From positions 310,001 through 374,000 of the forward strand of contig JAWMAR010000892.1 of the NCBI GenBank assembly GCA_036785375.1: a stretch of DNA of 64,000 nucleotides. Direction: 5' to 3'. The position numbers were made by a program, and so were the translations under genes. Numbering within the stretch: position 1 is the first letter of the stretch; each line of letters begins with the position of its first letter. A model generated the notes under the pieces. It made no database searches. It saw nothing but the letters and a program-made list of their open reading frames with translations, and had not been told where the DNA came from. Source of the stretch: Leucoraja ocellata. Its lineage: Eukaryota. Positions 1 to 43,479 of the stretch are shown here, piece by piece.

Positions 1-495
1 TTTTTCCCATTTTCTCCACAAATTTATTGTTTCACAAAGAGCAAGCCAAACATTTATCCCCGGCGGTTTGAAACAAGGCCTTCGACCCGATCTGAGACGA
101 CACTCTTAAATCAAACAACCCCTTCCCTGCTGTTCCCCGAAGAGCCTCCATTTTTCTGGAGCGTCACCATAATGGTCCCCCCCTCACCTACGATGCGGCC
201 ACCTGGGTGAGGGGTTCCTCCAGGTACTGGACTAAAGCCTCGGCCTTAGCCTGCAACATGCCGAATCCCACGGTCTCACGGGCGTACATACAGCAGCAGG
301 TTGGCCATCCTCGTGTTGGCCACTTGGCCCTCCATGCACTCCATGAGGATGAACCAGAGCGGGTCCTCGTTGAAGGCCATGTGCCCGTTCTTGGCGTACG
401 CTGCCCAGATGTTGCTGGCGATGGCGGCCGTTACCTGAGCGTCAGTGTTGCTGTAACCAGCGTAGGCCAGCAACGAACCCTCATTGTTCAACATC
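1..495 (-). pseudogene. LAMTOR2: Processed LAMTOR2 (p14/ROBLD3) retrocopy, copy 1: coding part 188-495 plus 3'UTR, poly(A) starting at window edge
   Basis: Minus strand encodes (M)[67 protein letters not shown]. After a 2-nt deletion it continues [33 protein letters not shown] (stop 188-190), matching LAMTOR2 residues ~24-125. No introns; AATAAA at 23-28 (minus); T-run at 1-5. Confidence 0.93.
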
Positions 496-1420
496 GTCCT
501 TCTAAACTCCACAGAGTACAGGCCCAGTGGAGGAGTAGGCCATTCGGCCCTTCGAGCCAGCACTGCCATTCAATATGATCATGGCTGATATTCCATAATC
601 AGTACCCCAATCCGGCTTTTTCCCCATATCCCTTGATTCCCTCAGCCCAAAGAGCTAAATCTAACTCACTTGAAAGCATCCAGTGAATTGGCCTCCACTG
701 CCTGCTGTGGCAGAGAATTCCACTGATTCACAACTCTCTGGGTGAAAAGTTTTTCCTCATCTCAGTCCTAACAGGCCAATCACTTATTCTTATACTGTGA
801 CCCCTGGTTCTGGACACCCCGAACACGTGGAATAGTGCTGCATCTAGCCTGTCCAAACCTTTAAGAATTTTATATGTTTCTATATGATATCCTCTCATCC
901 GTCTAAATTCCAGCGAATACAAGCCCAGTCGACCCATTCTTTCATCATATGTCAGTCCCGCCATCCCGGGAATTAACCTGGTGAACCTACGCTGCACTCC
1001 CTCATTAGCAATAATATCCTTTCTCAAATTAGGAGACAAAATTGCACACGATACTCCAGGTGCGGTCTCACCAGGGCCCTATACAACTGCAGTAGGACCT
1101 CCTTGCTCCTAAACTCAGATCCTCTCGCAATGAAGCTTTCTTCACTGCCTGCTGTATCTGCATGCTTACTTTCAGTGACTAATGTACAAGCACACGCAGG
1201 TCTCGTTGCACCTCCCCTTCTAAACTTGACAACATTCAGATAATAATCTGCCATCCTGTTCTTCCACCAAAGTGGATAACCTCACATTTATCCACATTAT
1301 ATTGCACCTGGCCATTCACCCAACCTATCCCAAATCACCCTGCAGCCACATAGCATCCTCCTTGCAGCTCACAGTGCCACCCAGCTTTGGGTCATCCGCA
1401 AACTTGGAGATTGCATTTAA
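496..1420 (-). mobile_element. Degenerate CR1 LINE 3' fragment (ORF2 C-terminus and 3'UTR), copy 1
   Basis: ORFs 1024-1254 and 728-1039 carry CR1 motifs LYRALVRPHLEY, EGVQRRFTRLIPGM and LGLYSLEFRRMRG; CR1-type 3'UTR at 510-720. Confidence 0.85.
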
Positions 1421-1957
1421 CTCCCTCGTCTGCTGCCCTTATCTCTACTCCAGCTCCCCACGGGCCTCCACCAGCAACTCCGCCGACCCCCGCCTCTCCA
1501 CCGGCCACCAGTGGGTTAGAACCGTCACCTCACCAGAGTTCCAGCACCAGGCCCACAACCTCCACCATGCAGACAGCACGTGGTCTGACTCTGCTGGGGC
1601 CTAGTGCTCTCCCCACACCTCCCCTTACAGGGAAAACCCATCAGTGGTGATGACTCTGCTGGGTCCTAGTGCCCCCCCCCCCCTCCTACACGGAAGACCC
1701 ATACAGGAAATTCCCAGCCCCTCTCCTTCAGCTCCCGGGCCCCCTTTTGGACTCCGGGCCCGGGTATGATGTACCCCCAGCAACCCCCCGCTCATAGGCC
1801 CTGTGTATACGTACACGCATATGTGAACAAAACACTGTGTGTGGTATGTATCTTTGTTAGGTTCCTAAAAATGAGCTCAACAAATTGATGTTATTTACAA
1901 CCACTTCATGACCACCGGAAAAACCCCAAACGACCCCCATGTGGGTCACGACTCCCA

Positions 1958-2907
1958 GGTTAAGACCCTTGCAAACCTCCAGACTCTCTTTGCAAATCCA
2001 CACTCTGCAAAGAGGTGGGCAACCGTCCCCTCTCCATAGCAGCCGTCCCGAGGGCAGCGTGCGCTGGTAGTGAGGATCCGACGGTGCAGGAAGGATCTGA
2101 CTGAGAGGGCTCCCCTCACCGCCAGCCAAGCCAGGTCTTGGTGCTTGTTGGGGAGTTCTGGCGATGAATCATTTTGCCAGACAAGCTGGGCAGTCTGCTC
2201 TGGGAACCACGCCACCGGATCCATGGAGTCATTTCCCTGCAGTGCCTGCAGGACATTCCGTGCTGACCACTTGTGGTCAAAGGTGTTGGTCCGGAAGAAG
2301 CTTTCCACAGGCGACAGATGGGGCGGCAATGTCCAGCTGACTGGCACATTGCATGGCATCTGCGCCAGGCCCATCCTTCGCAACACCGGGGACAGGTAGA
2401 ACCTCAGCAGGTAGTGACACTTGGTGCCCACGTGCCTTGGCTCTACACTCCGCCTGATGCAGCCACACACAAAGGTGGCCATCAGGGTGAGGGCGACGTT
2501 GGGCAAGTTTTTACCCCCGTTGTCTGGTGACTTGTACATTGTGGCCCGTCGCACCCGGTCCATCCTTGACCCCCAGATGAACTGGAAGACGGCCCGGGTG
2601 ATCCCTGTGGCGTAGGAGGGAGGGACAGGCCACACCTGCGCCAAGTACAGCAGCCCCAAGAGCACCTCACACCTGATGACCACATTTTTCCCCATTATAG
2701 AGGAATGTGCTTCCACAGCTCCAGTTTTTTCCCACCTTGGCTATCCGCTCCAGCCAATTCTTGTCACACGCCTCAACCCTCCCCCCGAGCCAGATCCCCA
2801 GCACCTTCAAGAAGTCAGGCTTGATGGTGAAGGAGAATGCAGATCAGTTGGGCCAGTTGCCAAAGAGCATGGCCTCGCTCTTCCTGCGGTTCACCCTGGC
2901 TCCGAGG
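1958..2907 (-). mobile_element. Tx1-clade (possibly Keno-like) non-LTR retrotransposon ORF2 C-terminal fragment
   Basis: ORF 1946-2716 (GKNVVIRCEVL..LLYLAQVWP..FQFIWG..QDLAWLAVRGAL..CPRDGC..TVAHLFAEC) is the post-RT/zinc-knuckle region typical of Tx1 elements. Homology breaks after FAKRVWR. Confidence 0.8.
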
Positions 2908-3904
2908 TATGTAAATAGTCGCCCACAAAGGACACTGACGAAGTTACAAATTCCCCCCTGCGTCAGATGCCCCTTTGTTCTTCCCCCTCCCCCTCATGGC
3001 GATCCCCCCATGCCAAGTCATCCTTTGTTCATTTCCCTTCCCTTTCCAGCTGAACCATGTTGCCACCCTTCTTCAGACCCAAACCAACCCAAAATATTAG
3101 GTGTCCATTCCCTCCACTGATGCTGCCTGACCCGCTGAGTTCCTCCAGCACTTTGCCCCTAGTGTATAGGATATAGAACTAGTGGTCAAAACACTCCAGT
3201 GATTTGCTCAAGATTCCACAACTGCAGTTCCTTGTGTCTCCATTACACCAACAGAAGGAAACACAACAAACTACAGCTGCTGGAATCTTACATCGAACAA
3301 ACGGTGGTGGAGTAACTCAGTGGGTCAGGCAGCACCTGAGGAGGGAAAGACAGATGACCTTTCGGGTTGAGCCCCTTCTTCAGACTCGTAGCACAGGAAA
3401 GGTGATTTGCAGTTCCTTCTTACACCCTGACTCGATCGCAGTTACCTGCAGTTCCACTTTACACCAACAGATGTCCCGCATGTCGCCGGGGGTCCGTTGC
3501 AGGTCTGGGTAAGTGAGGCCTGAAGTTCAGGGAGTGTAGATGTGAGTTCCGCATGTACAGGCGCTGGTGCTGGGAGGCAGCAGCACTACCTGCTGTGTCA
3601 CTGTGCTGCCCCCTTAGATAACAGAACCAGTGTGAACCGATGGTCGACGTGGACTTGATGGGCCAAAGGGCCTATTTCTAAGCTGTGCCTCTCGAATAAA
3701 GGGTCTTGACCCAAAAAATCGTCTGCCCTTTCCCGCCACAGATGGAAAGCCGCTGAGTTCCTCCAGCACTTTGTGTTTTGGATCTGTTGGTGTAAAGTGG
3801 GACTAACCTTGGCTGTGATAACGAGGAACTCTGTAAAGAGTAAAATGTAGAATTATGGGGAGTCATTGCAGTGTGAAAGGAGACCAGTCGGCACATTGAG
3901 CACA

Positions 3905-7300: not shown

Positions 7301-8663
7301 TTTAATTTTTGTAATAGTTTTTTCCTTTTCTCGTTGCTTCAGTTGCCTCGCAAGCAGTTTATGTGGCTTATCCCCAAATTCGAAGTGAGCTTGTTTTGTA
7401 ATTTGGAATAATCTTATTACTCTAGCCGATAATATTCTATTGACTTTATATTTCAGTAAAGTTATCTTATTATGTTTATTTATGGTTGGGTCAGTTGCAT
7501 TGTCCAGTTCTAGTAATTTTATCTTCTGTTCTATCCGCTGAAGTTCTCTTTTATTTTCCTTATTTTGAAAACTTTGGTAAGAGATTATGACACCGCGAAT
7601 ATATGCCTTGAAGGTTTCCCACAATAGCAGTGCAGAAATACCCGGTGTGTCATTTATTTCGAAAAAAAGGTTTGTTTGTTCTTTTATATACTCATAACCC
7701 TGCGGGTTATTTAATATGTGTGCATTGAACCTCCAAAAAGGCTTTATACTCGGCATTCCCTCAATTTTAAGTATAAAAGTCAATGGTGAGTGATCAGAAA
7801 TAATACTATTATGATATGAAGGTTTATTCGTATACGGGATCAATTTTGTGTCCAGTAAGAAATAGTCAATTCGCGAATAAGTTTTGTGAACTGATGAATA
7901 AAATGAGTATTCCCTACCACTTGGATTTGCTATTCTCCAAACATCAGCTATGTTATTATTTTTTATATAAGTATTTAAAAATTCACAGGTCTTGGTTTTA
8001 ACAAGACGCTTCCCTAGCTTTATTGATTTATCTAAATATGGATCTATAACACAATTGAAATCTCCCCCCATTATTATATTTTGAAAATTATGCTCTGCGA
8101 TTAAATCTATTATTTTCCTAAAAAATTGTGGGTTATCAAAATTAGGCGCGTAAATATTTATCATGGTTAATGGTGTATTGTAAATTTCTCCTGTGACTAT
8201 AACATATCTTCCCTCTTTATCAGATATGGAATTCTTTAATTTAAAAGGTATGCCCTTCCGAATTATAATGGCCGTGCCTCTTGCTTTAGAGGTGAATGAG
8301 GAGTAATAGGTTTGACCTATCCAATTTGCCCTTAATCTGAACTGAGTTTGTTGTTTCAAATGTGTCTCTTGTAAGAACGCAATATCCATATTTAATGATT
8401 TTAATTGTGCTAGAATTTTACCTCTTTTAATTGGCTCATTCGCACCTCTGATGTTCCAACTACAGAAGGTGAGACCTCCGGTATTTATTCGACTATTATC
8501 TTGCATTGGCTATTATTACCAGATTGTATTCTTCATGTGATGCAGCCAAGTACCTCAGAATCCCGAATCCAGAGTTGTCCTTCATAATTTCTACAATAGT
8601 TCTACATCTCCTGACATTATTAAACATAATTGAGGGGAAGAGAAAAACATAAAATAAAGTGTA
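4334..8663 (-). mobile_element. 5'-truncated L1-clade LINE with complete ORF2 and 17-bp TSD
   Basis: TSD CTGCTCCTATTATTTAT at 4317-4333 and 8664-8680; A-rich tail at the left end; truncated in the inter-ORF spacer. Confidence 0.95.
4697..8506 (-). pseudogene. L1 ORF2 (APE endonuclease, RT, zinc knuckle), ~1269 codons with one in-frame stop
   Basis: Motifs SWNIRG, FLQETH, GDFN, SRIDY, SDH (APE); QGCALSP, LYADD (RT); CDKC..THSFAGC. ORFs 5657-8506 and 4697-5650 are in the same frame, separated by TAA at 5657-5659. Confidence 0.93.
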
Positions 8664-8899: not shown

Positions 8900-10420
8900 G
8901 GAGAGTCCTACACAATCATAAACGCACACATATTCTTTTACATATTAAATATTGGAAGGAAAAACGTTCAGTAAAGTTAGTCCCTGGTGAGATAGGACTT
9001 TACAGTCTGAATGGCCTCTGGGAAGAAACTTCTTCTCAACCTCTCCGTTCTCACAGCATGGCAACGGAGGCGTTTGCCTGACCGTAGCAGCTGGAACGGT
9101 CCGTTGCAGGGGTGGAAGGGGTCTCCCATGATTTTAATGGCTCTGGAGTTGCACCTCCTGATGTATAGTTCCTGCAGGGGGGCGAGTGAAGGCTCTGCAA
9201 AGAGTCATAAAGACTGCAGAGAGGATTATCAGAACGGAACTCCCCTCCATGGATACAATCAATACACAGCGCTGTCAAAAACGAGCAGAGAGAATCATCA
9301 GAGACACACTACATCCAGCTCACTCCCTGCTCAAACACAAAAACTGCACATACAACCTCAGGCACAGACGAGCGGACAGCATCGTCACAAACAGAACACG
9401 CTTTTTTAAGAGCTTCTTCCCTGCCACAGTGAGACTCTTGGCCAAAACAAAATGAACTGATGTCCTGACCTACCTCATAGCACATCATATTATATTATAT
9501 TATATTGTCTCCTGGGCCTGTGCAATTTAAAATGCAATCGACACTTTTTTATATAGGGTTTGTGTAATTTACAATGCTCTCACTTTCCCCTTTATATAGG
9601 GTTCTAGGCATTTTCTTTCTTTTTTAGTTCTAAAGAAGTATATGTTTTTATAGATTATGTGTCTTCTGTGTGTCTTTTTAACTTGACTTGACTTGACTCT
9701 CTGAACAACCGCACAAGAGTTCCTATGTGTGTAAGCACAAATGGCAAATAAAGTTTTTGACCTTTGAAGTTCCCATAGTGCGTTCGGCCGAATGCACTAC
9801 TCTCTGCAGAGCATTCTTGTCCTGGGCAGAGCAGTTCCCAAAACAGATGGTAATATTTCCGGACAAGATGCTTTCCACAGCCGCTGAGTAGAAGCACTGG
9901 AGGATCCTCGGAGACACTCAGAATTTCCTCAATTGCCCGAGGTGGTAAAGGCGCTGCCTTGCCTTACTCACGAGTGCTGCGGCGTGTGATGTCCATGTCA
10001 TATCCTCAGAGATGTGGACTCCCAGATATTTAAAACAACTCACCCTATCCACAGTATCCCCATTTATCCTCAATGGTGTGTACGTCCTCGGATGATGTGC
10101 CCTCCTAAAGTCCATGATCAGCTCCTTAGTTTTTTTGATGTTCAAGAGGAGGTTGTTATCCTGGCACCAGTACCTGGGGCCTGGCGGTGAGAAAGTCCAG
10201 GGCCCAGGCACACAGGGAGGGTGTTGAGCCCTAATTCCAGTAGCTTCCCGGCAAGTCTGGTGGGGACTATCGTGTTGAAGGCTGAACTGAAGTCTATGAA
10301 CAGTATCCTCACATAGCCCCCCTTCTGGCTGTCAGGATGAGAGAGAGCGGTGTGCAAAACCTGGGAGACCGCATCGTCCGTGGATCTGTTCGGACGGTAT
10401 GCGAACTGCAATGGGTCCAT
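8900..10420. mobile_element. Cluster of rearranged Rex1-like LINE fragments (minus 8900-9185 and 9770-10420; plus 9186-9700)
   Basis: Minus pieces are near-identical to parts of the 13240-14870 element ([29 protein letters not shown]). The plus piece encodes ALQRVIKTAERII..HPAHSL. Confidence 0.8.
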
Positions 10421-11283: not shown

Positions 11284-12391
11284 TAGGCTGTGGGCCGAGG
11301 AGCTTTATTCCGCAGTTTCGTGACCCAAGTCACCAAACTACATGAAATTTTCACATATTGTGTAAAAAAAATTATATAAATCACCCCTGAAACTCGATAT
11401 GAAGAAGACTTGCACATTTTTATTAAATTAGAGAAAAACAGGAAACATTTCGGGTATTTTTTAGTCCAATCAAAGCACGTTTAACATTGAGTTGTCTGCC
11501 AGTTGGCCAATCACACGCTTTGTTTCAGGTTAGAACACAAAATGGCTGAGGGGGCTCCACAGATGCCTGTTTTACTGGAGATTCCGATTTGTTGTTCTGT
11601 GGAAACTTGCAGCAGGTAATTGTATTTAGTGGGAAAAGCATTAAAAAGGCTGAAGAAAGTGCTGCTAAGTTGATGGAAGTGTTGAAAGTGATGGAAGTCT
11701 TGAAAGCAAAGTCCCTGTTGAGGTCCTGGAACACAATGATTAAGAGCCAGGAACCAACTCTAACTAAAAGGTAAGATCTAAAGTCTGAATTTATGAAAAT
11801 CTATCTGTATGGAGTTTAATTAATTTAATTGCACCCTTTTATAATGTGAATAAATTCATTCATTCACTTACTTCATTCATGAAGTTGAGGGCCTAAACTA
11901 TATGTGTCCATAACAATCAATTAAATATTGTCACTAATGCCAGCCTGTTGTACAGTAATAAGTCTTTAACAGCTAATCTCGGAGCTGCCTGCGAAAACGT
12001 ACCGGGAAAAAGTGCTCCGATCGCGGGACATAGGTACTCGCGGTAAAGTGAAGCCGCGGTCTCAATTAATAAGCGGCCGATTCGCGAACGCGGAGCCGTG
12101 GATCGTCTCCGCGGGCGGGTGTGGGAGGCTGTACATAGTGCCGTCTATAGCGGCCGTTATCAGACCCCGACAACGGGAAAAAAACGGAATGGAATTCCAC
12201 TGAAATGGAAGCCTATAAATAGCAATCGATATCCCTCCGTTTTTTTTCCCGTTGTCGGGGTCTGATAACGAGTTTCAGGGGTGATTTATATAATTTTGTT
12301 TACACAATATGTGAAAATTTCATGTAGTTTGGTGACTTGGCTCACAAAATCCTTTTTCTAGACACATTTTTGATGCTCGGCCCACAACCTA
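11284..12391. mobile_element. Non-autonomous DNA transposon (~1.1 kb) with long terminal/subterminal inverted repeats
   Basis: Ends TAGGCTGTGGGCCGAG (11284) and CTCGGCCCACAACCTA (12391); ~75-bp inner inverted arms at about 11320-11396 and 12269-12345. Confidence 0.75.
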
Positions 12392-13239: not shown

Positions 13240-14870
13240 ATTACCTCTGGTGCCACCGAAGCCGAAGGGAGGAATGTGCACACATTCTCGCTGTCCGAGC
13301 ACGACGTGAGGAGGGCTCTGACACGGGTGAACACGAGAAAAGCTGCAGGCTCCGATGGCATCTCGGGGCGAGTACTCAAGTCCTGTGCTACGCAGCTAGC
13401 TCCAGTGCTCACTACATTATTCAACCTCTCCCTGGACAAGTCCGTGGTCCCTGCCTGCTTCAAAAAATCCATCATTGTACCGGTACCAAAAAATGCCTCC
13501 CCAGCCTGTCTGAATGACTACCGTCCGGTGGCCCTTACCTCGGTAGTCATGAAATGCTTTGAGAGGCTGGTGAAGAATCATATCTGCCCCTTCCTCCCTC
13601 GGAACATGGACCCATTGCAGTTCGCATACCGTCCGAACAGGTCCACGGACGATGCGGTCTCCCAGGTCTTGCACACCGCTCTCTCCCATCTGGACAGCCA
13701 GAAGGGGGGCTACGTGAGGATGCTGTTCATAGACTACAGTTCAGCCTTCAACACGATAGTCCCCACCAGACTGGCCGGGAAGCTAATGGAATTGGGGCTC
13801 AACACCTCCCTGTGTGCCTGGGTCCTGGACTTTCTCACCGCCAGGCCCCAGGTAGTCAAGATGGGAGGGAATACATCGGAGTCCCTCACCCTGAGCACAG
13901 AATCGCCCCAGGGTTGCGTCCTCAGCCCCCTATTGTACTCCCTGTACACACATGACTGTGTGGCTAGGTTCAGCTCCAATTCAATAATTAAGTTTGCTGA
14001 TGACACTGTGGTGGTGGGCCTGATCTCAGACAACGACGAGAAGGCCTACCGGGAGGAGGTGGCTGATCTAGCACTCTGGTGCCAGGATAACAGCCTCCTC
14101 TTGAACATCAAAAAAACGAAGGAGCTGATCATGGACTTTAGGAGGGCAAATCATCCGAGGACGTACACTCCATTGAGGATAAATGGGGATCCTGTGGATA
14201 GGGTGAACTGTTTTAAATATCTGGGAGTCCACATCTCTGAGGATATGACATGGGCATCACACGCCTCAGCACTCGTGAGTAAGGCAAGGCAGCGCCTTTA
14301 CCACCTCAGGCAATTGATGAAATTCAGAGTGTCTCCGAGGATCCTCCAGTGCTTCTACGCAGCGGCGGTGGAAAGCATCTTGTCCGGGAACATTACCATC
14401 TGGTTTGGGAATTGCTCTGCCAAGGACAAGAAGGCTCTGCAGAGAGTAGTGCGTTCGGCCGAACGCACTATGGGAACTTCACTCACCCCCCTGCAGGAAC
14501 TATACAACAGGAGGTGCAACTCCAGAGCAAACAAAATCATGGGAGACCCCTTCCACCCCTGCAACGGACTGTTCCAGCTGCTACGGTCAGGCAAACGCCT
14601 CCGTTGCCTGCGGTGAGAACAGAGAGGTTGAGAAGGAGTTTCTTCCCAGAGACAATTCGGACTGTAAACGCCTATCTCACCAGGGACTATCTCTACAGAA
14701 TGTTTTTCCTTCCACTATTTATTATGTAAAAGAATATGTGTGTTATGATTGTGTTTATAATTTGTTTGGTTGTTTTGTTGTTTGTCTTTTGCACAAAAGT
14801 CTGCGAGCATTGCCACTTTCATTTCACTGCACATCTCGTACGTGTATGTGACAAATAAATTTGACTTGAC
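13240..14870 (+). mobile_element. 5'-truncated Rex1/Babar-like LINE; RT ORF 13276-14616
   Basis: [50 protein letters not shown]; 3'UTR ends AATAAATTTGACTTGAC. Confidence 0.9.

Positions 14871-14910: not shown

Positions 14911-14955
<45 letters not shown>
14911..14955 (+). repeat. (ACAG)n microsatellite
   Basis: About 11 tandem ACAG units. Confidence 0.95.
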
Positions 14956-15470: not shown

Positions 15471-15485
15471 TCTTTTCTTTTGAAC
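15471..15485 (-). terminator. snRNA 3' box-like element
   Basis: GTTCAAAAGAAAAGA about 21 nt downstream of the U2 3' end resembles the 3' box consensus GTTYN(0-3)AAARNNAGA. Confidence 0.55.
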
Positions 15486-15506
15486 TTTGAAAATCTCCCA
15501 AAAGGG

Positions 15507-15657
15507 AAGTGCACCGTTCCCAGAGGCACTGCAATACTGGGTCGATGCGTGGAGTGGACGGAGCAAGCCCCTATTCCATCTCCCTGTTCCAAAAATCAAT
15601 TTAATATATGGTCCCTAGATAAGGGACGTATCAGATATTAAACTGATAAGAACAGAT
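15507..15657 (-). ncRNA. RNU2: U2 snRNA gene, nt 38 to 3' end only (first 37 nt replaced by an insertion)
   Basis: Minus strand ATCTGTTCTTATCAGTTTAATATCTGATACGTCC...ATTTTTGG (Sm site)...GCTTGCTCCGTCCACTCCACGCATCGACC...ATTGCAGT...GAACGGTGCAC matches vertebrate U2 from A38 onward. Confidence 0.97.
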
Positions 15658-16169
15658 TTTTTTTTCTTTTTTCTTTTACCCCATTATCTCCACACATTTA
15701 TTGTTTCACAAAGAGCAAGCTAAACATTTATCCCCGGCGGTTTGAAACAAGGCCTTCGACCCGATCTGAGACGACACTCTTAAATCAAACAACCCCTTCC
15801 CTGCTGTTCCCCGAAGAGCCTCCATTTTTCTGGAGCGTCACCATAATGGTCCCCCCCTCACCTACGATGCGGCCACCTGGGTGAGGGGTTCCTCCAGGTA
15901 CTGGACTAAAGCCTCGACCTTAGCCTGCAACATGCCGAATCCCACGGTCTCACGGGCGTAGATACAGCAGCAGGTTGGCCATCCTCGTGTTGGCCACTTG
16001 GCCCTCCATGCAGTCCATGAGGATGAACCGGAGCGGGTCCTCGTTGAAGGCCATGTGCCCGTTCTTGGCGTACGCTGCCCAGATGTTGCTGGCGATGGCG
16101 GCCGTTACCCGAGCGTCAGTGTCGCTGTAACCAGCGTAGGCCAGCAACGAACCCTCATTGTTCAACATC
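15658..16169 (-). pseudogene. LAMTOR2: Processed LAMTOR2 retrocopy, copy 2 (coding part 15862-16169), poly(A) abutting U2 nt 38
   Basis: Same peptide and same 2-nt deletion as copy 1; AATAAA at 15697-15702; A-rich tail about 15657-15677. Confidence 0.93.
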
Positions 16170-17710
16170 GTCCTTCTAAACTCCACAGAGTACAGGCCCA
16201 GTGGAGGAGTAGGCCATTCGGCCCTTCGAGCCAGCACCGCCATTCAATATGATCATGGCTGATATTCCATAATCAGTACCCCGATCCGGCTTTTTCCCCA
16301 TATCCCTTGATTCCCTCAGCCCAAAGAGCTAAATCTAACTCACTTGAAAACATCCAGTGAATTGGCCTCCACTGCCTGCTGTGGCAGCGAATTCCACTGA
16401 TTCACAACTCTCTGGGTGAAAACGTTTTTCCTCATCTCAGTCCTAACAGGCCAATCACTATTCTTATACTGTGACTCCTGGTTCTGGATGCCCCCAACAC
16501 AGGGAATAGTGCTGCATCTAGCCTGTCCAAACCTTTAAGAATTTTATATGTTTCTATATGATATCCTCTCATCCTTCTAAATTCCAGCGAATACAAGCCC
16601 AGTCGACCCATTCTTTCATCATATGTCAGTCCCGCCATTCCGGGAATTAACCTGGTGAACCTACGCTGCACTCCCTCATTAGCAATAATATCCTTCCTCA
16701 AATTAGGAGACAAAATTGCACACGATACTCCAGGTGCGGTCTCACCAGGGCCCTATACAACTGCAGTAGGACCTCCTTGCTCCTAAACTCAGATCCTCTC
16801 ACAATGAAGCTTTCTTCACTGCCTGCTGTATCTGCATGCTTACTTTCAGTGACTAATGTACAAGCACACTCAGGTCTCGTTGCACCTCCCCTTCTAAACT
16901 TGACAACATTCAGATAATAATCTGCCATCCTGTTCTTCCACCAAAGTGGATAACCTCACATTTATCCACATTATATTGCACCTGGCCATTCACCCAACCT
17001 ATCCCAAATCACCCTGCAGCCACATAGCATCCTCCTTGCAGCTCACACTGCCACCCAGCTTTGGGTCATCCGCAAACTTGGAGATTGCATTTAACTCCCT
17101 CGTCTGCTGCCCTTATCTCTACTCCAGCTCCCCACGGGCCTCCACCAGCAACTCCGCCGACCCCCGCCTCTCCACCGGCCACCAGTGGGTTAGAACCGTC
17201 ACCTCACCAGAGTTCCAGCACCAGGCCCACAACCTCCACCATGCAGACAGCACGTGGTCTGACTCTGCTGGGGCCCAGTGCTCTCCCCACACCTCCCCTT
17301 ACAGGGAAAACCCATCAGTGGTGATGACTCTGCTGGGTCCTAGTGCCCCCCCCCCACAGGGAAGACCCATACAGGAAATTCCCAGCCCCTCTCCTTCAGC
17401 TCCCGGGCCCCCTTTTGGACTCCGGGCCCGGGTATGATGTACCCCCAGCAACCCCCCGCTCATAGGCCCTGTGTATACGTACACGCATATGTGAACAAAA
17501 CACTGTGTGTGGTATGTATCTTTGTTAGGTTCCTAAAAATGAGCTCAACAAATTTATGTTATTTACAACCCCTTCATGACCACCGGAAAAACCCCAAACG
17601 ACCCCCATGTGGGTCACGACTCCCAGGTTAAGACCCTTGCAAACCTCCAGACTCTCTTTGCAAATCCACACTCTGCAAAGAGGTGGGCAACCGTGTCCTC
17701 TCCATAGCAG
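15675..17710 (+). repeat. Direct duplicate of 1-2042 (LAMTOR2 + CR1 + unassigned segment + Tx1 tip)
   Basis: Colinear near-identity at offset ~15,674; homology ends at 2042/17710 (..CTCCATAGCAG). Confidence 0.95.
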
Positions 17711-18024: not shown

Positions 18025-18238
18025 TGTAATGCGTGGGTCCCAAAATGAGGCAAGTAGTCTGAAGTTTGAGAAGCACTTTACTTTATTTCCTCCCGGTTCA
18101 GGGGAAGACGAAACCAGGGAAAGATGGCACCCAAACCCTGCCTTTTATACCCTCCGGCTAAGGACCGCCTCCGGACTGCGCCACTCCTGTGCCGAGGGGT
18201 TCGGCAGTATAATGGCACGACCCTTAGGAGCCGCCACA
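18025..18238 (-). repeat. 3' LTR
   Basis: Two visible mismatches versus 22404-22617; TATAAAA and AATAAA on the minus strand. Confidence 0.95.
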
Positions 18239-18239
18239 G

Positions 18240-21200
18240 GACCCCCCCCAGAACCAGAAGCACAAAACGCACCGGCGGGCGCACGACCCGGCCGGCCCGC
18301 GTGCGGAAGTCAGCAGATCCCGGGGCTTGCGGGGGCGTAGGTGGAGGGACAGGTCGAGGGGCCGGTGGGAGGACAGGTGGAGTGACAGGTGGAGGGAGTC
18401 GTGAGGGGGGGCGCCCTCGGGGCCGGGGTTGAGCAACCAGCACCGGCTGATCAATGTCCAGGCGCGCTGGCTTTAAACGGTCAATCGACTCGGCCTCCGG
18501 CCGGCTCCCCATGTCCAGGACAAAAGTCAACTGCCCGTGTTCCAGCACCCGGAACGGGCCCTCGTACGGCCTCTGGAGTGGCGTCCGGTGGGCATCACGG
18601 CGCAGGAAGACGTATGGGCAGTCCGTGAGGGCCATTGGCACGTGTGGGCGAAATGTCCCATGGCGGGACGTCGGGACGGGTGCGAGCCTGCCAACTCGCT
18701 CGCGAAGCCGTTGAAGGGTGGAGGAGGGCGTTTCCTGCTGCTCCGGCGCAGACGGCACGAACTCCCCGGGCACTGTGAGTGTCGACCCGTACACAAGCTC
18801 CGCCGATGATGAGGCCAAGTCTTCTTTGGGAGTGGTCCGGATGCCCAGCATGACCCACGGCAACTCGTCCATCCAGTCCGGGCCGGTGAGTCGCGCCTTC
18901 AATGCCGCCTTCAGCTGCCGGTGGAACCTCTCCACCAGACCGTTAGCCTGCGGGTGGTAAGCCGTGGTGTGGTGCAGCTGCACCCCCAGCAAGCGAGCCA
19001 TGGCTGACCACAGCTCGGAGGTGAACTGTGGCCCCCGGTCGGAGGAGATGTGCGCCGGCACCCCGAAGCGAGCAATCCAGTGCGCGGACAACGCACGAGC
19101 ACACGTAGCCGATGAGGTGTCAGCCAACGGAATGGCCTCCGGCCACCGCGTGAAGCGGTCCACCATGGTCAAAAGGTGGGTGATGCCCCGGGACGGTGGA
19201 AGGGGCCCCACAATGTCCACGTGGAGATGGTCGAACCGCCGGTGAGGTAGACTGAACTCCTGGAGAGGTGCGCGGACATGGCGCTGGATTTTTGCCGTCT
19301 GGCACGGGATGCAGGTGCGAGCCTAATGGGCAACTTGCTTGCGCAGACCGTGCCACATGAAGCGAGCTGCCACCAGTGCCGTTGTCGCCCGGATCGATGG
19401 GTGAGCCAGTCCGTGGATGACCTCGAACACTCTCCGGCGCCAGGTGGCAGGGACGATGGGGCGCGGCTGACCGGACGACACATCGCACAGGATTGTCACA
19501 ACCCCAGGACCGAGAGGGACATCCTCAAGACGGAGGCCGGAGATGGCAGTCCGGTAGGTGGGCACCTCGTCGTCCGTGAGCTGTGCCGCCGCCAGAGCAG
19601 AATAGTCCATTCCGGGCGCCACCTCGAACACGGCATTTATAGCAGGGCGGGACAATGCGTCGGCCACCCGGTTCTCTTTCCCCTTGACGTAGCAGATGGC
19701 TGTGGTGTACTCGGAGATGTAAGCCAACTGCCGCTGCTGACGTGCGGACCAGGGGTCGGAAACCTTTTGCAGGGCGAAAGTGAGCGGTTTATGGTCGGTG
19801 TAGGCGGTGAACGGGCGGCCCTCCAGGAAGTAACGAATATGGCGCACAGCCAGGTACAGAGCCAGGAGCTCACGATCGAACGCGCTGTACTTGGTCTGCG
19901 CGCGGTTGAGGTGCCGACTGAAGAAGGCCAGAGGCCGCCAAACTCCGCCTGTCAGCTGCTCCAGTACAGCACCAACTGCCGACTCCGAGGCGTCCACAGT
20001 GAGAGCAGTTGGGGCATCTTCCCGCGGGTGCACCAGCAGCACGGCCCGAGCAAGGGCCTCCTTCGCGCCGTCGAAAGTTGCCTCCGCCTCGTGGGTCCAC
20101 TCAACGCTCTTTTGCTGCCCACCCGCCAGAAGTTGATACAGGGGCCGCATGATGTGGGCCGCGGATGGCACAAAACGATGGTAGAATGCCACCATGCCGA
20201 CAAATTCCTGCAGGCCACGCACCGTGCGTGGGCGGGGAAACCGACGGATGGCGTCAACCCTGTCAGGCAGGGGAACCGCGCCTTGCGCAGTCACGCGGTG
20301 GCCGAGAAAGTCAATTTCGTTGACCCCAAAACGGCACTTGTCCAGGTTGATGGCCAAACCATGCTCGCTGAGCCGCTGACAGAGCTGTCGAAGGTGAGCG
20401 CAGTGTTCCTGCTGTGAGCGGCTGACCACCAGGATGACACGAATTCGAGGTCACGACACACCCCGTCCATGAGGCGCTGAAAGGCCTGTGCAGCGTTTTT
20501 GAGGCCGAACGGCATCCGAGTAAACTCGTAAAGCCCGAATGGCGTGATGATAGCCGTCTTGGGTACGTCATCCGGGTGAACCGGGATCTGATTATAACCC
20601 TGCACCAGATCCACTTTTGAAAAAAATGTGGCCCCAGCCAAATGGGCCGTGAAGTCCTGGATGTGGGGTACGGGGTATCGATCCGCTGTTGTTGCAGCGT
20701 TCAGCCGTCGGTAATCCCCACAAGGTCGCCAGCCCCCGCTTGACTTAGGGACCATGTGGAGTGGGGACGCCCAAGGGCTGCTCGAAGGGCGGACGATCCC
20801 CAAGGCCTCCATCGTGCGGAATTCCCGCCGTGCCAGATGCAGTTTATCTGGTGGCAGTCGTCGTGCTCGTGCATGGAGTGGTGGGCCGGTAGTCGGGATA
20901 TAATGTACAACTCCGTGGCTGGGGGTTGCTGAATGAAACTGCGGAGTGAGAATGTCCGGGAACGCAGCCAAGATTCGTGCGAATCGGGAGTCCACGGCCG
21001 CCAGTGGCCGTCCCACCGGTTGACCCAAGCGCAACGTGATCGGCTCCATTGTAGTGGCGTTGACCAAACGCTGACGCCCGACGTCCACCATGAGGGAATG
21101 CGTCCGGAGAAAATCGGCCCCGAGCAATGGTTGGGAGACGTCGGCAACGGTGAAGTTCCATGAAAAATGGCAGGAGCCGAGCACGATGGGAACCATGCGC

Positions 21201-21410
21201 AGTCCATATGTGCGGATGGGGCTGCCGTTCGCTGTGGTGAGGACGGGCCCCCGCTTACCGGAACGAATGTCGGCCAGCGAAGGGGGCAGGACGCTGAGCT
21301 CCGCTCCTGTATCCACGAGGAAGCGGGTCCCGGAGCGCCGACCCCAAGCGAAAAGGTGGTGAATTTGGCCGGCCACCGCGGGGACTATTGGCAGCCGGCC
21401 CAGGCGTTTC
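18240..21410 (-). pseudogene. Gypsy pol (protease-RT-RNaseH-integrase), disrupted
   Basis: [91 protein letters not shown] deletion at ~20436 removes YxDD and shifts frame; TAG at 19323-19325. Confidence 0.92.
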
Positions 21411-22374
21411 CCGGGAATGTGCATGGCTGGCGGCATTGTCGTGCTGCAGCACCCCAGCGCTGATGGAAATAGCACCAGCTCCTTGTGTTCGTGCTATTTG
21501 GAGCTTGCCTGCCCCTGCTGGTGATGCCTGCAGCTTGCTGGCGCTGGACTGCAGGTGCAGTACCCCTCACTGCCGCTGGGGGTAATCGAGCGGGCCGTCG
21601 GGCTGGAGCTGTCACTCCTTCCACAGCTCCCCCGCCCCACCGGAGGAAATCGGGAGCTGCTGGGGTGACGTCATCGGCGTGCCTGCCGACGGCCAGCGCG
21701 TTGACGTCATCGGCGTGCCTGCCGACGGCCAGCACGTTGACGTCATCGGCGTGCCTGCCGACGGCCAGCGCGTTGACGTCATTCGGGCGCGTCGACCTCA
21801 GCGCGACCTCGTCTCTGCTGACGCCCAGCGCGCTGACGTCATCAGGGCGCGCCATCCACATGGCGTCGGCGCGCCTCCCGAGGGCCCGAAGGTCGGCAAA
21901 CGAGGCGTCGGTGAGTTGCAACCTAATGTAGGCCGGCAGCAGATGCAGGTAAGTGTACTCGAACAACAGGCACGGCGTGTGCCCGTCTAATAACGCCACC
22001 ATTTCCTTTAGGAGGGTAGACGGCCGCCGGTCGCCCAGGCCACCCATATGCAGGATCCTACCTGCCCGCTCCATCCTACTTAGTCCATAAATTTGGAGCA
22101 GGAGCTGTTTCAGGCCGAGGTATTTATTATTGTCCGGGGGGGCTGCGAGGAAATCCGATACTTCTTCCACCGCATCCTGGTCGAGGGCTCCCACCAGGTA
22201 ATAGAAGCGGGTGGCATCGACCGTGATGCCCCGCAGGTTGAACTGGGCCTCCGCCTGCTGGAACCAGATGAGCGGCCGTGTGGTCCAGAAGCTGGGCAGT
22301 TTTACGGAGACCGCGTCCAGAGACAGGGTCGGGCTGGCGTGTGAGGAGGTAGGGCTTTGTTCTGTCTCCATCAT
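21385..22374 (-). CDS. Gypsy gag (open frame)
   Basis: [42 protein letters not shown]; in-phase G GGA AAC slippery site at 21406-21412 overlapping the start of pol. Confidence 0.85.
21667..21790. repeat. 36-bp tandem repeat within gag ([12 protein letters not shown] x~3)
   Basis: TTGACGTCATCGGCGTGCCTGCCGACGGCCAGCGCG units. Confidence 0.9.
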
Positions 22375-22403
22375 GATGCCAATGGAGCGTCGGGGGTCAC
22401 CAA

Positions 22404-22617
22404 TGTAGTGCGTGGGTCTCAAAATGAGGCAAGTAGTCTGAAGTTTGAGAAGCACTTTACTTTATTTCCTCCCGGTTCAGGGGAAGACGAAACCAGGGAA
22501 AGATGGCACCCAAACCCTGCCTTTTATACCCTCCGGCTAAGGACCGCCTCCGGACTGCGCCACTCCTGTGCCGAGGGGTTCGGCAGTATAATGGCACGAC
22601 CCTTAGGAGCCGCCACA
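22404..22617 (-). repeat. 5' LTR
   Basis: Pairs with 18025-18238; followed by the PBS on the minus strand. Confidence 0.95.
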
Positions 22618-24097: not shown

Positions 24098-27000
24098 TTT
24101 TTTTTTTTAAATATTTTATTTTATTAGAAGTAAGCACAGTCATATGGCACCAAAGTGCCTAATATATATTTTCATAATACATTTTATGTACAACTTCTTT
24201 TTTTTTTTTGTTACATTGAAAAAAGATGAGCATAAGAAAAAGAAGTTAGATAGTAAAGGATAGAAAGATGTGAAATATATAGTGTGTGAAGAAAGAAAAC
24301 GAGTAAATGAAGAAAGTTGAGAGAGAAAATAGTGAAAAGAAAAGGAGATCATTATTTATAATCTTGACCAACCCTCGTCCAGTCCTGAAACAGTTATTTT
24401 TTACAATTGTGTTGCACCATATGATTCCAAAAAAACGACGAATGGAGACCAACTCGTTATGAATTGGTCTGGTTTATCCATTAGGAGGAATCGCATTTCC
24501 TCAAGATGAGCGGTGTCCAACATACTTGCAATCCACATTTTAAGCGTTGGTATTGATGTACCCTTCCAAAATTTAAGTATTAATTTTTTTGCTATTATTA
24601 AACCATAGTTAAGGAATAGATTTTGAGATGTGTTCAATTTATTCCCATCTTCCATTACACCAAATATAATCATTTCAGTATTAGGTTCCATTCTTGTCTT
24701 GAATAATTTTGTAAGTATTTCAAAAATATCATTCCAAAATCTATAAAGTTTTATGCAGGAAACTAAGGAGTGTGTTATAGTTGCCTTTTGGGCTAGACAT
24801 TTATCACAAGTGGCGGATATATTTGGGTAAAATTTGTTCAATCTTGTTTTTGAATAATATAATCTATGTACAATTTTAAATTGAATTAGATTATGTCTTA
24901 CATTAATTGAACATTTGTGAATATATATCAGGTATTTTTCCCATTTAACCTTCGTAATTTTTATCATTAATTCCCGTTCCCACTCTTCTCTAAGTACCTC
25001 TGTCGATGGTAGGTCTATATTTAGAATACTATTATATAAATAGGATATTAATTTTTGTGAGTCAGCTTCAATATTCATTGCTTCTTCCAATAAGTCAGGA
25101 GTTACTTTTTGATATCCTTGTATATATTTTTTCACAAAGTCGCAAATCTGAAGATATTTAAAATATTGGTTGTTTTTCAATTTAAATTTTAATTGTAGTT
25201 GTTGGAATGATAGTAGGTTTCCCATTTCGTACATATCCCTGATCCTTCTAATTCCGAGACTTTCCCATTGGTTATATGTCTTATCAATAAGAGATGGTTT
25301 AAATAAAGGGTTATTCGCAATTGGCATTAACAGTGATAGATTTCTTAATTTTAAAGATAATTTTATTTGTTTCCAAATTCTTATTGTACCATATATAATT
25401 GGGTTCTTCTTATATATTGTGTTATTCAGTTTTTTTGGGGAAAAGAGGATCGTTCCTATATTTCAAGGATGACAATCCTCCTTCTCCATTTTTATCCATT
25501 CTGTCTGTTGTGTAGAACTATCCAACCAATAAATCATATTCTTAATATGCACTGCCCAGTAATAATACATAAAATTCGGAAGTGAAAGTCCCCCGACCTC
25601 TTTTGGTTTACATAAGTGTTTTTTTGTGATTCTATGTGATTTATAGTCCCAAATATAATTTGTAATGTTAGAGTCTAATTTTTTTTTAAAATATTTTGGT
25701 ATATATACCGGTATAGACTGAAATAGGTATAGTAATTGTGGTAGGAAGATCATTTTTATTGCATTTATTCTACCTAATAATGATAAGGGAAGTGTTTTCC
25801 AAAATTTAATCCGTGTATTAAGTTTATTTAATAAAGGTATGAAATTAGCATTGAATAATGCTTTATATTTTCTAGTAATCTGAATACCCAAATATTTAAA
25901 TTTTTCTGTTGCGATTTTAAAGGGGAACTTCAGTAAGTGTGTAGGTTCTTGAGGTTTTAATGTCATGATTTCGCTTTTGTTCCAGTTTATTCTATATCCA
26001 GAAAAAGACCCAAATTCCTCTATTAAGTTTAATAAATTTGGTATGCTCGTTTGTGACTTTGTAATATATAAAAGTATATCGTCTGCATATAATGAGATTT
26101 TATTCTTTGAGTCCCTGGTATTATAGCCCTGAATATTCGGATGAATTCTTATACTTTCAGCCAGGGGTTCTATCATAAGGGCAAATAGCAGGGGTGATAG
26201 TGCACATCCCTGCCTATTACCCCTTGATAGTTGAAATTTTTGAGATAACATGTTATTAGTTAAAATTCTTGCCATCGGTTTATCATATAATAATTTTACC
26301 CATGTTATAAAATTCTCTCCTATATTAAATTTTTGTAGTACTTTATATAAGTATTGCCACTCTACCTGATCAAATGCTTTCTCTGCATCCAAAGAAATAA
26401 TTGATATATGTTCTTCCTCTACTTTATGCGAGTACATTATATTAAACAGGCGTCTCAGATTATTAAATGAGTATCTTTTAGGTATAAACCCCGTTTGATC
26501 AGGGTTTATCAGTTTACTAATATATTTGCTTAATCTACTTGCTAAAATCTTTGCTAAAATTTTCTGATCTGTATTTAAAAGTGATATAGCTCTGTACGAG
26601 CCCGGATCTTCTAAATCTTTATCTTTTTTTGGAATAAGCATAATAGTTGATTCTGTTAGTGTTTCAGGTAGTTTGTTTTCTTTAAAAGCATGGGAGTATA
26701 AATTAAATAAATAAGGGGCCGTTATCTCCTGAAATTTTTTATAAAATTCATTATTAAAACCATCTGGTCCATTTTTACCATTTTTCAACGATTTTATTGT
26801 TTCACCTATTTCTTTGATTGTAATTTGAGCTCCTAGTTCCTCTTGTTCCAAAGGGTCCAGTATTGGAAGATTACAGTTATCTAGAATTTTTTTTATTTTA
26901 CTATCTTCTATTTTAATTTTAGATGTATATAAGTTTTGGTAAAATTGGGCAAATCTATTATTAATATCTTTAGGTAGTATTAGTAATTTGCCTTTCTCTG

Positions 27001-37440: not shown

Positions 37441-37740
37441 AGTTTTAGTTTAGTTTAGAGATACAGCGCAGAAACAGGCCCTTCAGCCCAACACGTCCGC
37501 GGTGACCAGTGATCCCCGCACACTAACACACTAGGGACAATTTACAATTATACCAAGCCATTTAGCCTACAAACCTGTACGTCTTTGGAGTGTAGGGGGA
37601 AACTGGAGATCCCGGAGAAAACCAACACAGGTCACAGGGAGAACGTACAAACTCCGTACAGACAGCACCCGTAGTCAGATTTGTCCCCGGGTCTCTGGTG
37701 CTGTGAGGCAGCAACTCTACCGCTGCGCCACTGTGCCACC
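37441..37740 (-). mobile_element. HE1-type SINE ('SINE b', distal recombination partner)
   Basis: Its right part and flank CCCCGGTGTTTCACAACTG are shared with the SINEs at 39283 and 49111. Confidence 0.85.
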
Positions 37741-43410: not shown

Positions 43411-43479
43411 CAGCGTTAACATTAACAAGACAGTGCTGACTGGCTAGCACCCAACAAAAGCTTTTCACTGTTCCTCGAC

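What the first reader, a model, noticed from the sequence alone, without database searches (positions are those of the whole stretch)
15471..16169. A host mRNA (LAMTOR2) retro-inserted precisely at the Keno/Utopia target site of a U2 snRNA gene
Seen: the poly(A) of an intronless LAMTOR2 copy joins U2 directly at A38/T39 (..AAAA|TCTGTTCTTATCAG), just after the branch-point recognition sequence. The U2 remainder is complete and followed by a 3' box-like motif, so it looks like a genomic gene and not a U2 retrocopy. Known: Keno (Tx1 clade) and Utopia non-LTR elements insert sequence-specifically at this U2 position. A Tx1 fragment lies ~1.5 kb upstream in the same orientation. Inference: trans-mobilisation of a cellular mRNA by a site-specific retrotransposon, giving an address-targeted processed pseudogene. 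I do not recall this being described for U2. Caveat: U2 nt 1-37 and a TSD were not found in the window.
Basis: partly seen in the sequence, partly recalled or inferred. Interest (0 to 1): 0.85.

Follow-up and report, generated by a model that had tools for sequence, protein, structure and literature searches.

The report
LAMTOR2 retrocopy at U2 insertion site
A skate genome holds dead, intron-less copies of the host gene LAMTOR2 whose poly(A) tail is fused to a U2 snRNA gene at the exact base where U2-specific jumping genes insert, which suggests that such an element once copied a host message to its own address.

Summary
On the minus strand, an intron-less, frameshifted LAMTOR2 copy (residues 24-125, 3'UTR, AATAAA, 21-nt A-rich tail) abuts U2 at nt 39. 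Two papers give this as the 3' junction of Keno and Utopia.

The interpretation needs three corrections.
- The LAMTOR2 piece is not a free-standing processed pseudogene. It is the 3' module of a co-linear block of about 2.05 kb (this copy) and about 2.96 kb (a second copy at window 1-2960). The block runs: L1/Tx1-type ORF2 internal fragment, unknown, CR1-like 3' part, 34-nt CR1-like snippet, LAMTOR2.
- LAMTOR2 starts at the exon 1/2 boundary. The template was therefore an alternative or chimeric transcript, or template switching took place.
- Both window copies (1.6% apart) and an annotated Leucoraja erinacea protein share eight derived residues. That points to one ancestral insertion, later multiplied.

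No U2 nt 1-38 and no TSD were found. No U2-targeting LINE could be shown.

Best reading (0.6): one insertion of a polyadenylated LAMTOR2-containing RNA by a U2-site-specific LINE. How it multiplied is open. The scan noted the same junction on another piece of this genome (s1-884652, unchecked).

The parts
15471..15485 (-). 3'-box-like A-rich motif about 20 nt downstream of the U2 end
   Evidence: Located and read. The likeness to the snRNA 3' box is recalled, not tested.
15504..15656 (-). U2 snRNA gene part, nt 39 to the 3' end; stems and Sm site look intact in the Rfam alignment
   Evidence: Homology starts at the Keno/Utopia junction.
15657..15677 (-). A-rich tail, 21 nt with 2 G, joined directly to U2 nt 39
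15678..15861 (-). LAMTOR2 3'UTR with AATAAA at 15702-15697, ending 19 nt before the tail
   Evidence: Shared with copy 1.
15862..16166 (-). LAMTOR2 coding part, residues 24-125 plus stop; intron-less; 2-nt deletion at residues 92-93; starts at the exon 1/2 border
16167..16200 (-). 34-nt snippet matching an internal stretch of the CR1-like repeat (26 of 31 positions by my own comparison of the letters, no alignment run), placed out of order between the repeat's 3' part and LAMTOR2
16201..17104 (-). About 0.9 kb 3' part of a CR1-like interspersed LINE, in sense, lacking the last ~20 nt of the repeat's usual 3' end
   Evidence: The four other copies in the window that I aligned continue into a common 3' terminus. 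ORF remnants. The name CR1 is recalled: Pfam and the Atlas gave no family.
17105..17643 (-). Unidentified G-rich stretch of about 0.54 kb
   Evidence: No Pfam family and no Rfam match.
17644..17710 (-). Last 67 nt of an L1/Tx1-type ORF2 internal fragment (zinc-knuckle region); 5' end of copy 2
   Evidence: Copy 1 carries the longer version.
1..2960 (-). Copy 1 of the same block: A tail cut by the window start, LAMTOR2 (CDS about 497->190), snippet, CR1-like part, unknown, and a longer L1/Tx1-type ORF2 fragment (about 1976->2960; zf-RVT ORF at 1946-2716)

Best explanation
One ancestral retro-insertion was made by the machinery of a U2-gene-specific non-LTR retrotransposon. This could be a Keno-type element with an APE endonuclease or a Utopia-type element with a restriction-like endonuclease.

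The enzyme nicked a U2 gene at its usual site, between nt 38 and 39. It then primed reverse transcription on the poly(A) tail of a LAMTOR2-containing RNA instead of on its own RNA.

The template was not the canonical mRNA. Exons 2-4 are spliced together, but exon 1 is replaced by at least 2.9 kb of TE-derived sequence. That sequence was either an alternative TE-derived 5' exon spliced onto exon 2, or it was added by template switches of the reverse transcriptase.

The 5' part of U2 was lost at integration or later. The dead copy collected about eight amino-acid changes. It then multiplied to at least two copies here, 15.7 kb apart and 1.6% diverged, plus one more copy or divergent allele annotated in Leucoraja erinacea.

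Shown: the anatomy, the junction position, the poly(A) signal and tail, the absence of introns, the shared derived changes, and the two copies with different 5' ends.

Inferred: which enzyme acted, that the target was a live U2 gene, and how the copies multiplied. On the last point I put re-transcription and re-insertion at neighbouring U2 genes at about 50-55%, and DNA duplication at about 45-50%.
For: Junction:
- U2 homology starts at the model position of nt 39, directly after the A tail.
- This is the published shared 3' junction of Keno and Utopia (PMC4640811; PMC6136364).
- By my own estimate, a random poly(A) insertion would hit this one position among roughly 150 in U2, and hit a U2 gene at all, with negligible probability.

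mRNA origin:
- AATAAA ends 19 nt before a 21-nt A tail.
- LAMTOR2 residues 24-91 and 94-125 are continuous over two exon borders.

Gene context of U2:
- The sequence runs past the U2 3' end into a 3'-box-like motif, not into an A tail.
- Loss of the U2 5' fragment on integration is reported for Utopia (PMC4640811).

One ancestor:
- Eight residues unique to the chimera among the 12 aligned LAMTOR2 sequences are shared by both window copies.

A single unit:
- All internal junctions are identical in both copies, and divergence is fairly even: 33 substitutions in 2032 aligned positions.

Hints of re-insertion rather than DNA copying:
- The 5' ends differ, at 17710 against about 2960, and the flanks are unrelated.
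- The last ~28 nt before and into the tail differ at 4-5 positions, against 1.6% overall.
- The two copies have the same orientation and lie 15.7 kb apart, as clustered targets would give.
- The U2 part shows no visible decay in the Rfam alignment.

Precedent for the principle:
- Tx1-Mar LINEs carry SINEU to their own target (PMC4494074).
Against: - No U2 nt 1-38 at either 5' flank or anywhere in the window. No TSD.
- Only one junction can be seen here. Copy 1 runs off the window. The junction on another piece is an unchecked note of the scan (s1-884652).
- No U2-targeting LINE was shown in this genome.
- The L1/Tx1-type fragment in the block is an internal piece without its own 3' end. It may be mere cargo of an alternative transcript, in which case it says nothing about the enzyme.
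- Its clade rests on relatives with APE + RT + zf-RVT domains, and on one relative (Danio, 40% identical to a 41%-identical relative) that a source names TX1.
- The 3' box reading is recalled, not tested.
Word holdings in 14 runs of 6 studies show that the content exists, not that the junction does.
- The two copies are close together, which also fits a local DNA duplication.
Confidence: 0.6

Rival explanations
1. Nested insertion. A Keno-type element already sat in this U2 gene with its own A tail. An ordinary L1-type LINE then inserted the LAMTOR2-bearing cDNA into that tail, in the same orientation, and deleted the resident element's ORF2 end and 3'UTR. On this reading the L1/Tx1-type fragment is the resident element, and the address was not chosen for the LAMTOR2 RNA.
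For: - A tails are preferred L1 targets and force the same orientation (established knowledge of L1 endonuclease preference).
- The L1/Tx1-type fragment lies at the 5' end of the block and lacks about 95 codons plus its UTR, as a target-site deletion would leave it.
- A near-intact L1-like LINE with an A-rich tail lies in the same window, at 4697-8561.
Against: - No A run and no LINE 3'UTR remnant lies between the ORF2 fragment and the next module.
- It needs a deletion of several hundred bases that ends exactly at the insertion.
- It leaves the different 5' ends of the two copies to a further DNA rearrangement.
- It does not explain the short out-of-order CR1-like snippet any better.
Confidence: 0.15
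2. No site-specific enzyme was involved. An L1-type reverse transcriptase first copied U2 snRNA from its 3' end, stalled in the heavily modified 5' region, and jumped to the end of the LAMTOR2 RNA's poly(A) tail. This would give a template-switch chimera that is not in a U2 gene at all.
For: - snRNA-containing chimeric retrocopies and tailless snRNA retropseudogenes are known. They are cited in PMC4494074 (passages).
- U2 nt 1-38 and a U2 promoter are absent.
- No other U2 gene lies in the 64 kb.
Against: - The break would have to fall by chance on the Keno/Utopia junction, one position in about 150.
- The sequence continues past the mature U2 end into a 3'-box-like motif, which a copy of mature U2 RNA should lack.
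- No TSD.
- In the known chimeras the snRNA sits at the 5' end, not the 3' end (PMC4494074, passages).
Confidence: 0.05
3. The junction is a product of DNA rearrangement, misassembly or chance, and no reverse transcription at a U2 site took place.
For: - The region is dense with repeats and duplications.
- Read support could not be obtained.
Against: - The junction joins a poly(A) tail to the one known LINE target base in U2.
- The block's content is held by 14 DNA runs from 6 studies at 0.63-0.70 of sampled words.
- A near-identical chimeric ORF is annotated independently in L. erinacea.
- The scan noted the same junction on another piece (unchecked).
Confidence: 0.04

Closest known systems
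Keno (Tx1-clade, APE-type non-LTR retrotransposons specific for U2 snRNA genes)
   Same: - Identical 3' junction: the downstream U2 begins with the same 20 letters, at nt 38/39 (PMC6136364; PMC4640811).
- The insertion destroys the U2 gene.
- An L1/Tx1-type ORF2 fragment is present in the inserted block.
   Different: - The 3' end of the insert is a host mRNA 3'UTR with its own poly(A) signal, not a LINE 3'UTR.
- The ORF2 piece is an internal fragment.
- No Keno reference sequence was available, so kinship is untested.
- The papers read report Keno from frogs, fish, lancelet and hydra. Cartilaginous fish are not mentioned in the passages I read.
Utopia (restriction-like-endonuclease non-LTR retrotransposons specific for U2 genes)
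   Same: - Same junction at nt 39.
- Variable 5' junctions, and loss of the U2 5' fragment on integration is reported (PMC4640811). This fits the missing nt 1-38 here.
   Different: - No RLE-type element or ORF was seen in the window.
- The cargo is host RNA.
SINEU mobilised by Tx1-Mar LINEs (crocodilians)
   Same: A target-specific Tx1-clade LINE mobilises a non-autonomous RNA in trans to the LINE's own target. Template switching is invoked to explain the composite 5' parts (PMC4494074, passages).
   Different: - There the cargo is a SINE family with snRNA-derived heads and the target is a Mariner transposon.
- Here the cargo is a polyadenylated host-gene transcript and the target is the U2 gene.
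L1-made processed pseudogenes, semi-processed retrocopies and chimeric retrocopies
   Same: - Intron loss.
- Poly(A) tail after AATAAA.
- Truncated or variable 5' ends.
- Co-linear fusion of unrelated RNAs without tails between them.
   Different: - The insertion site is the fixed base of a site-specific element, not an A/T-rich random site.
- No TSD.

Membership tests
Processed (retro-)copy of LAMTOR2 | Coding sequence homologous to LAMTOR2 | tested here: met
   Residues 24-91 at E 5e-33 and residues 94-125 at E 3e-13 to solved LAMTOR2 chains. Robl_LC7 domain.
Processed (retro-)copy of LAMTOR2 | Introns absent | tested here: met
   One of 12 gene models skips the exon between ..DCM and ..AK, and three diverge right after ..AK. 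The window reads through both borders. The first intron cannot be judged, because exon 1 is absent.
Processed (retro-)copy of LAMTOR2 | Poly(A) tail following a polyadenylation signal | tested here: met
   AATAAA at 15702-15697; 21-nt A-rich tail at 15677-15657.
Processed (retro-)copy of LAMTOR2 | Target-site duplication | tested here: not met
   No shared word longer than 7 nt between the 80 nt at the 5' flank and the 200 nt after U2.
Insertion at the Keno/Utopia site of a U2 gene | 3' junction at U2 nt 38/39 | tested here: met
   Searches set against PMC4640811 and PMC6136364.
Insertion at the Keno/Utopia site of a U2 gene | U2 nt 1-38 at the 5' junction | tested here: not met
   The paper reports the same absence for oomycete Utopia.
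Insertion at the Keno/Utopia site of a U2 gene | The target is a real U2 gene (gene-type 3' flank, 3' box) | tested here: inconclusive
   A 3'-box-like motif lies at 15485-15471. No intact U2 gene of the species could be compared.
Insertion at the Keno/Utopia site of a U2 gene | A U2-specific LINE exists in this genome | not testable with these tools
Tx1 clade / Keno (the ORF2 fragment) | APE + RT + zinc-knuckle ORF2 architecture | tested here: met
   zf-RVT in the fragment. Full-length relatives carry Exo_endo_phos, RVT_1 and zf-RVT. This defines the L1/Tx1 superfamily only.
Tx1 clade / Keno (the ORF2 fragment) | Placement with named Tx1/Keno references in an RT tree | not testable with these tools
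   No Repbase references were available. Only one relative carries a source name 'transposon TX1...' (Danio, 40% to P0171). The fragment is 41% identical to P0171 and barely alignable to the L1-like LINE in the window (one 32-residue match at the zinc knuckle, E 0.024).
Non-autonomous retroelement family | Several copies with a common 3' end and different 5' ends | tested here: met
   Two copies in the window end at 17710 and at about 2960. A third ORF-level copy or divergent allele is P0183.
Non-autonomous retroelement family | Independent insertion sites (own tails, own flanks or TSDs) | tested here: inconclusive
   The tail border differs between the copies. But copy 1's tail and 3' flank lie outside the window.

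The most novel reading that the evidence does not exclude
The block is a living or recently living non-autonomous retroelement. On this reading it is a TE-plus-host-gene transcript that ends in the LAMTOR2 polyadenylation signal. A U2-specific LINE recognises it only by its poly(A) tail and writes it repeatedly into U2 genes, so that it behaves as a retrogene with a fixed genomic address. At least one copy still has an intact 127-codon open frame and is annotated as a LAMTOR2-like gene. If true, a site-specific Tx1- or Utopia-type enzyme has relaxed, L1-like template recognition.
Probability: 0.3. Interest if true: 0.75.

Novelty: new variant of a known kind. Interest (0 to 1): 0.55.

Why it matters
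Site-specific LINEs are studied as natural tools for writing genes at a safe address. How strictly they choose their RNA template is a central open point.

A host transcript written into the exact Keno/Utopia base of U2 would be natural evidence that such an enzyme can accept any polyadenylated RNA. Retrocopies could then be address-targeted. If the block re-inserted several times, it would also show a new route to a non-autonomous element, built on a host mRNA tail.

I found no report of an mRNA-derived insertion at this site in six full-text searches. That absence covers only the held library. The supplements of PMC4640811 and PMC4494074, and the original Keno paper (not held), were not seen.

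Tried and rejected
Things that led nowhere:
- A named Tx1 phylogeny was not possible. The representative search, cluster look-ups, the Atlas and a third homology search gave many APE+RT+zf-RVT relatives, but only one TX1-type name among animal hits and no Keno reference. A flax protein carries the same TX1 name, which shows that the name is loosely applied.
- A tool-based name for the CR1-like module was not obtained. Pfam gave none and the Atlas scored 0.77, a lead only. The RT ORF at 13276-14616 is a different LINE and gave no tblastn match to the block.

Ideas rejected:
- A tandem 15.7-kb U2 array unit. The intervals upstream of the two copies share only scattered repeats and a 77% LINE pair.
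- A Gypsy insertion hiding the continuation of copy 2. The ORF2 continuation has no second match in the window.
- Retained intron 1 as the source of the upstream block. The two letters before the exon-2 start are not AG (read). An upstream exon spliced onto exon 2 remains possible.
- A degenerate U2 5' half at the 5' flank of copy 2. By eye it looked slightly similar, but Rfam gave nothing.
Full report
WHAT IS THERE

Everything lies on the minus strand. Rfam finds a single U2 snRNA match in the 64 kb, at 15504-15719, scoring 118.5 bits against a gathering score of 46. Its alignment shows that true homology begins where the model reads ...AUCUGUUCU. Everything 5' of that is A's and gaps.

Directly 5' of it lies a 21-nt A-rich tail with two G's (15677->15657). 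An AATAAA at 15702-15697 ends 19 nt before the tail.

Upstream follow about 184 nt of 3'UTR and a LAMTOR2 reading frame. Residues 24-91 match solved LAMTOR2 chains at E 5e-33, and residues 94-125 at E 3e-13. Pfam finds Robl_LC7. A 2-nt deletion breaks the frame at residues 92-93.

In an alignment of 12 LAMTOR2 proteins and gene models, one model skips the exon between ..DCM and ..AK, and three diverge right after ..AK. The window reads straight through both borders. The copy therefore lacks introns there.

After the U2 end the sequence does not turn into an A tail. It carries GTTCAAAAGAAAAGA at 15485-15471. I recall this as resembling an snRNA 3' box, but I did not test that.

THE JUNCTION IS THE PUBLISHED ONE

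In passages of PMC4640811, the U2 sequence downstream of Utopia starts at nucleotide 39 and is identical to that flanking Keno. The 5' junctions vary, and in oomycetes the U2 5' fragment is deleted on integration. In passages of PMC6136364, the Keno 3' target is given as the same 20 letters that follow the tail here.

Because U2 nt 38 is an A, the border can be counted as 37/38 or 38/39.

IT IS NOT A FREE-STANDING PROCESSED PSEUDOGENE

The stretch 15680-17710 recurs at window 6-2042 with 98.1% identity. All pieces have the same orientation, and no tails or duplications lie between them. Reading the minus strand of the copy in question, in 5'->3' order (coordinates):

1. 17710->17644: the end of an L1/Tx1-type ORF2 fragment.
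2. 17643->17105: an unidentified G-rich stretch.
3. 17104->16201: about 0.9 kb of the 3' part of a CR1-like interspersed LINE.
4. 16200->16167: a 34-nt snippet.
5. LAMTOR2, its 3'UTR and tail, then U2.

On item 3: the four other copies of this repeat that I aligned from the window run on into a common 3' terminus, whereas the block's copy stops about 20 nt short of it. Pfam and the Atlas gave no family.

On item 4: by my own comparison of the letters, without an alignment run, the snippet matches an internal stretch of the same repeat family at 26 of 31 positions. It stands out of order.

Copy 1 carries the same junctions. It extends further 5', through a 256-codon zf-RVT ORF (1946-2716) to about 2960. 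Aligned with seven elasmobranch relatives, this ORF2 breaks off just after the zinc knuckle. Six of the seven relatives continue past the break, and five of them run about 95 further codons to a shared C-terminus. The piece is therefore an internal fragment with neither its own C-terminus nor its own 3'UTR.

WHERE LAMTOR2 BEGINS

In the same 12-sequence alignment, five gene models with aberrant N-termini all diverge immediately before LLNNEGS (Esox, Hypanus, Callorhinchus, Serinus, Dendropsophus). Six others keep the canonical start. The twelfth sequence is the chimera itself. This marks the exon 1/exon 2 border.

The LAMTOR2 part of the block starts at that same point, within one codon. The two letters in front are not AG, so a retained intron 1 is unlikely.

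Two readings remain:
- An upstream TE-derived exon was spliced onto exon 2, so the whole block copies an alternative transcript.
- The reverse transcriptase switched templates several times.

The short out-of-order snippet and the truncated 3' ends of two LINE pieces favour switching. The exact exon border favours splicing. I cannot decide here.

ONE ANCESTOR, THEN MULTIPLICATION

A homology search with the 97-codon chimeric ORF found XP_055522045.1, annotated 'LAMTOR2-like isoform X2' of Leucoraja erinacea. Its features:
- 127 residues, 99% identical to the query over 96% of its length.
- The repeat-derived N-terminus is included.
- It lacks the frameshift.
- It lies on a 222-kb contig.

It equals neither window copy, so it is a third copy or a divergent allele.

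Eight residues occur only in the chimera among the 12 aligned sequences, several of them at columns otherwise at least 90% conserved. Both window copies carry them. The true gene of another skate, Rhinoraja (P0245), does not carry those that fall in the part its model covers. So a single inserted copy decayed for some time before it multiplied. The mRNA was not captured repeatedly.

The two window copies differ by 33 substitutions in 2032 aligned positions (1.6%) plus 8 gap positions. The differences are spread fairly evenly over the modules, and seven of them are CpG-type.

HOW THE COPIES MULTIPLIED IS OPEN

For re-transcription and re-insertion at U2 genes:
- The 5' ends differ and the flanks are unrelated.
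- The last ~28 nt up to and into the tail differ at 4-5 positions, against 1.6% overall. A-rich sequence also mutates fast, so this is weak evidence.
- The copies share orientation and lie 15.7 kb apart, as clustered targets would give.
- The U2 part has intact stems in the Rfam alignment.

For DNA duplication:
- The copies are close together.
- Copy 1's tail and any U2 lie outside the window.
- Neither 5' flank holds U2 nt 1-38 or shared U2-upstream sequence.

A simple tandem unit is excluded, because the intervals upstream of the two copies share only scattered repeats and a 77% LINE pair.

The scan's notes say that the same LAMTOR2-U2 junction stands on another piece of this genome (s1-884652). 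I could not check that.

THE ENZYME

The relatives of the ORF2 fragment that could be named are elasmobranch, the best being Rhinoraja at 88%. Full-length kin carry APE, RT and zf-RVT domains.

One Danio relative is named 'transposon TX1 uncharacterized 149 kDa protein' by its source. It is 40% identical to P0171, and P0171 is 41% identical to the fragment.

The near-intact, low-GC L1-like LINE in the window (4697-8561) is only 28% identical to P0171 in the RT region. It is barely alignable to the fragment: one 32-residue match at the zinc knuckle, E 0.024.

This places the fragment in the L1/Tx1 superfamily, on the side that sources call TX1. It does not show that the fragment is Keno. No restriction-like-endonuclease LINE was seen among the 20 large ORFs scanned.

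MECHANISM AND ODDS

Best reading (0.6): a U2-specific LINE's endonuclease nicked a U2 gene at its usual base, and its reverse transcriptase primed on the poly(A) tail of a LAMTOR2-containing RNA. The U2 5' part was lost. The copy decayed and then multiplied.

Rivals:
- Insertion by an ordinary L1 into the A tail of a resident Keno, with a deletion: 0.15.
- A template-switch chimera that began on U2 RNA: 0.05.
- Rearrangement, misassembly or chance: 0.04.

The remainder stays unassigned.

COMPARISON AND NOVELTY

That a target-specific Tx1 LINE carries non-autonomous RNAs to its own address is described for SINEU and Tx1-Mar (PMC4494074, passages). A host-gene transcript at the U2 site did not turn up in six full-text searches.

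These searches cover only the held library. The original Keno paper is not held. The supplements of the two Kojima papers, which list junctions, were not seen. I rate this a new variant of a known kind.

LIMITS

From then on I worked beside the U2 part, and no read evidence exists for the junction.
- The species is inferred only from the best protein matches: a skate, with Leucoraja erinacea at 99% and Rhinoraja at 88%.

Noticed in passing
window 4697-8561 and 24413-28257 (minus strand): Two low-GC (about 0.30-0.32) L1-like LINEs, 77% identical over 3.86 kb. The first is nearly intact: its ORF2 is split by one stop into 949 and 317 codons with APE, RT and zf-RVT, and it ends in an (AAAT)n-like A-rich tail near 4340. 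Each lies a few kb upstream of one copy of the LAMTOR2 block, in the same orientation. Coincidence or not is unexplained.
   Followed up: partly
outside the window: XP_055522045.1 (P0183), Leucoraja erinacea, on a 222-kb contig: A copy or divergent allele of the chimeric repeat-LAMTOR2 ORF with an intact 127-codon frame. It is annotated as 'LAMTOR2-like isoform X2' and has a repeat-derived N-terminus in place of exon 1. Whether it is expressed or functional is unknown.
   Followed up: partly
window 18025-22579 (minus strand): Gypsy-type LTR retrotransposon. Its ORFs carry a gag-like DUF7041, aspartyl protease, RT, RNase H and integrase. The LTR ends are 98.9% identical over the 176 bp compared. 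It lies 315 bp upstream of copy 2.
   Followed up: partly
window 37443-56069: Several 2-3 kb direct duplications at 95.8-97.6% identity, for example 38664-41602 with 48497-51402 and 43115-45777 with 51405-54069. This matches the scan's note s1-885693.
   Followed up: no
window 43007-43558 (minus strand): 183-codon ORF with an immunoglobulin C2-set domain (butyrophilin/CD80-like). It is possibly an exon of a host immune-type gene inside the duplicated region.
   Followed up: no
window 12133-12319: Sub-threshold Rfam matches to several plant miRNA-precursor families on both strands (best E 0.0003, far below gathering). Most likely a long hairpin or inverted repeat such as a MITE.
   Followed up: no
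window 9765-10170 and 14076-14481: A 406-bp inverted repeat pair at 94.8% identity lies between the two copies of the block. A (GACA)n microsatellite lies at about 14913-14955.
   Followed up: no
other pieces of the same genome (scan notes s1-884863, s1-884898, s1-885076 and others): Seven unchecked notes describe U2 snRNA 5' domains or fragments carried inside DIRS retrotransposons. Here the U2 3' part is left behind without its 5' part. Whether the two observations are connected was not examined.
   Followed up: no
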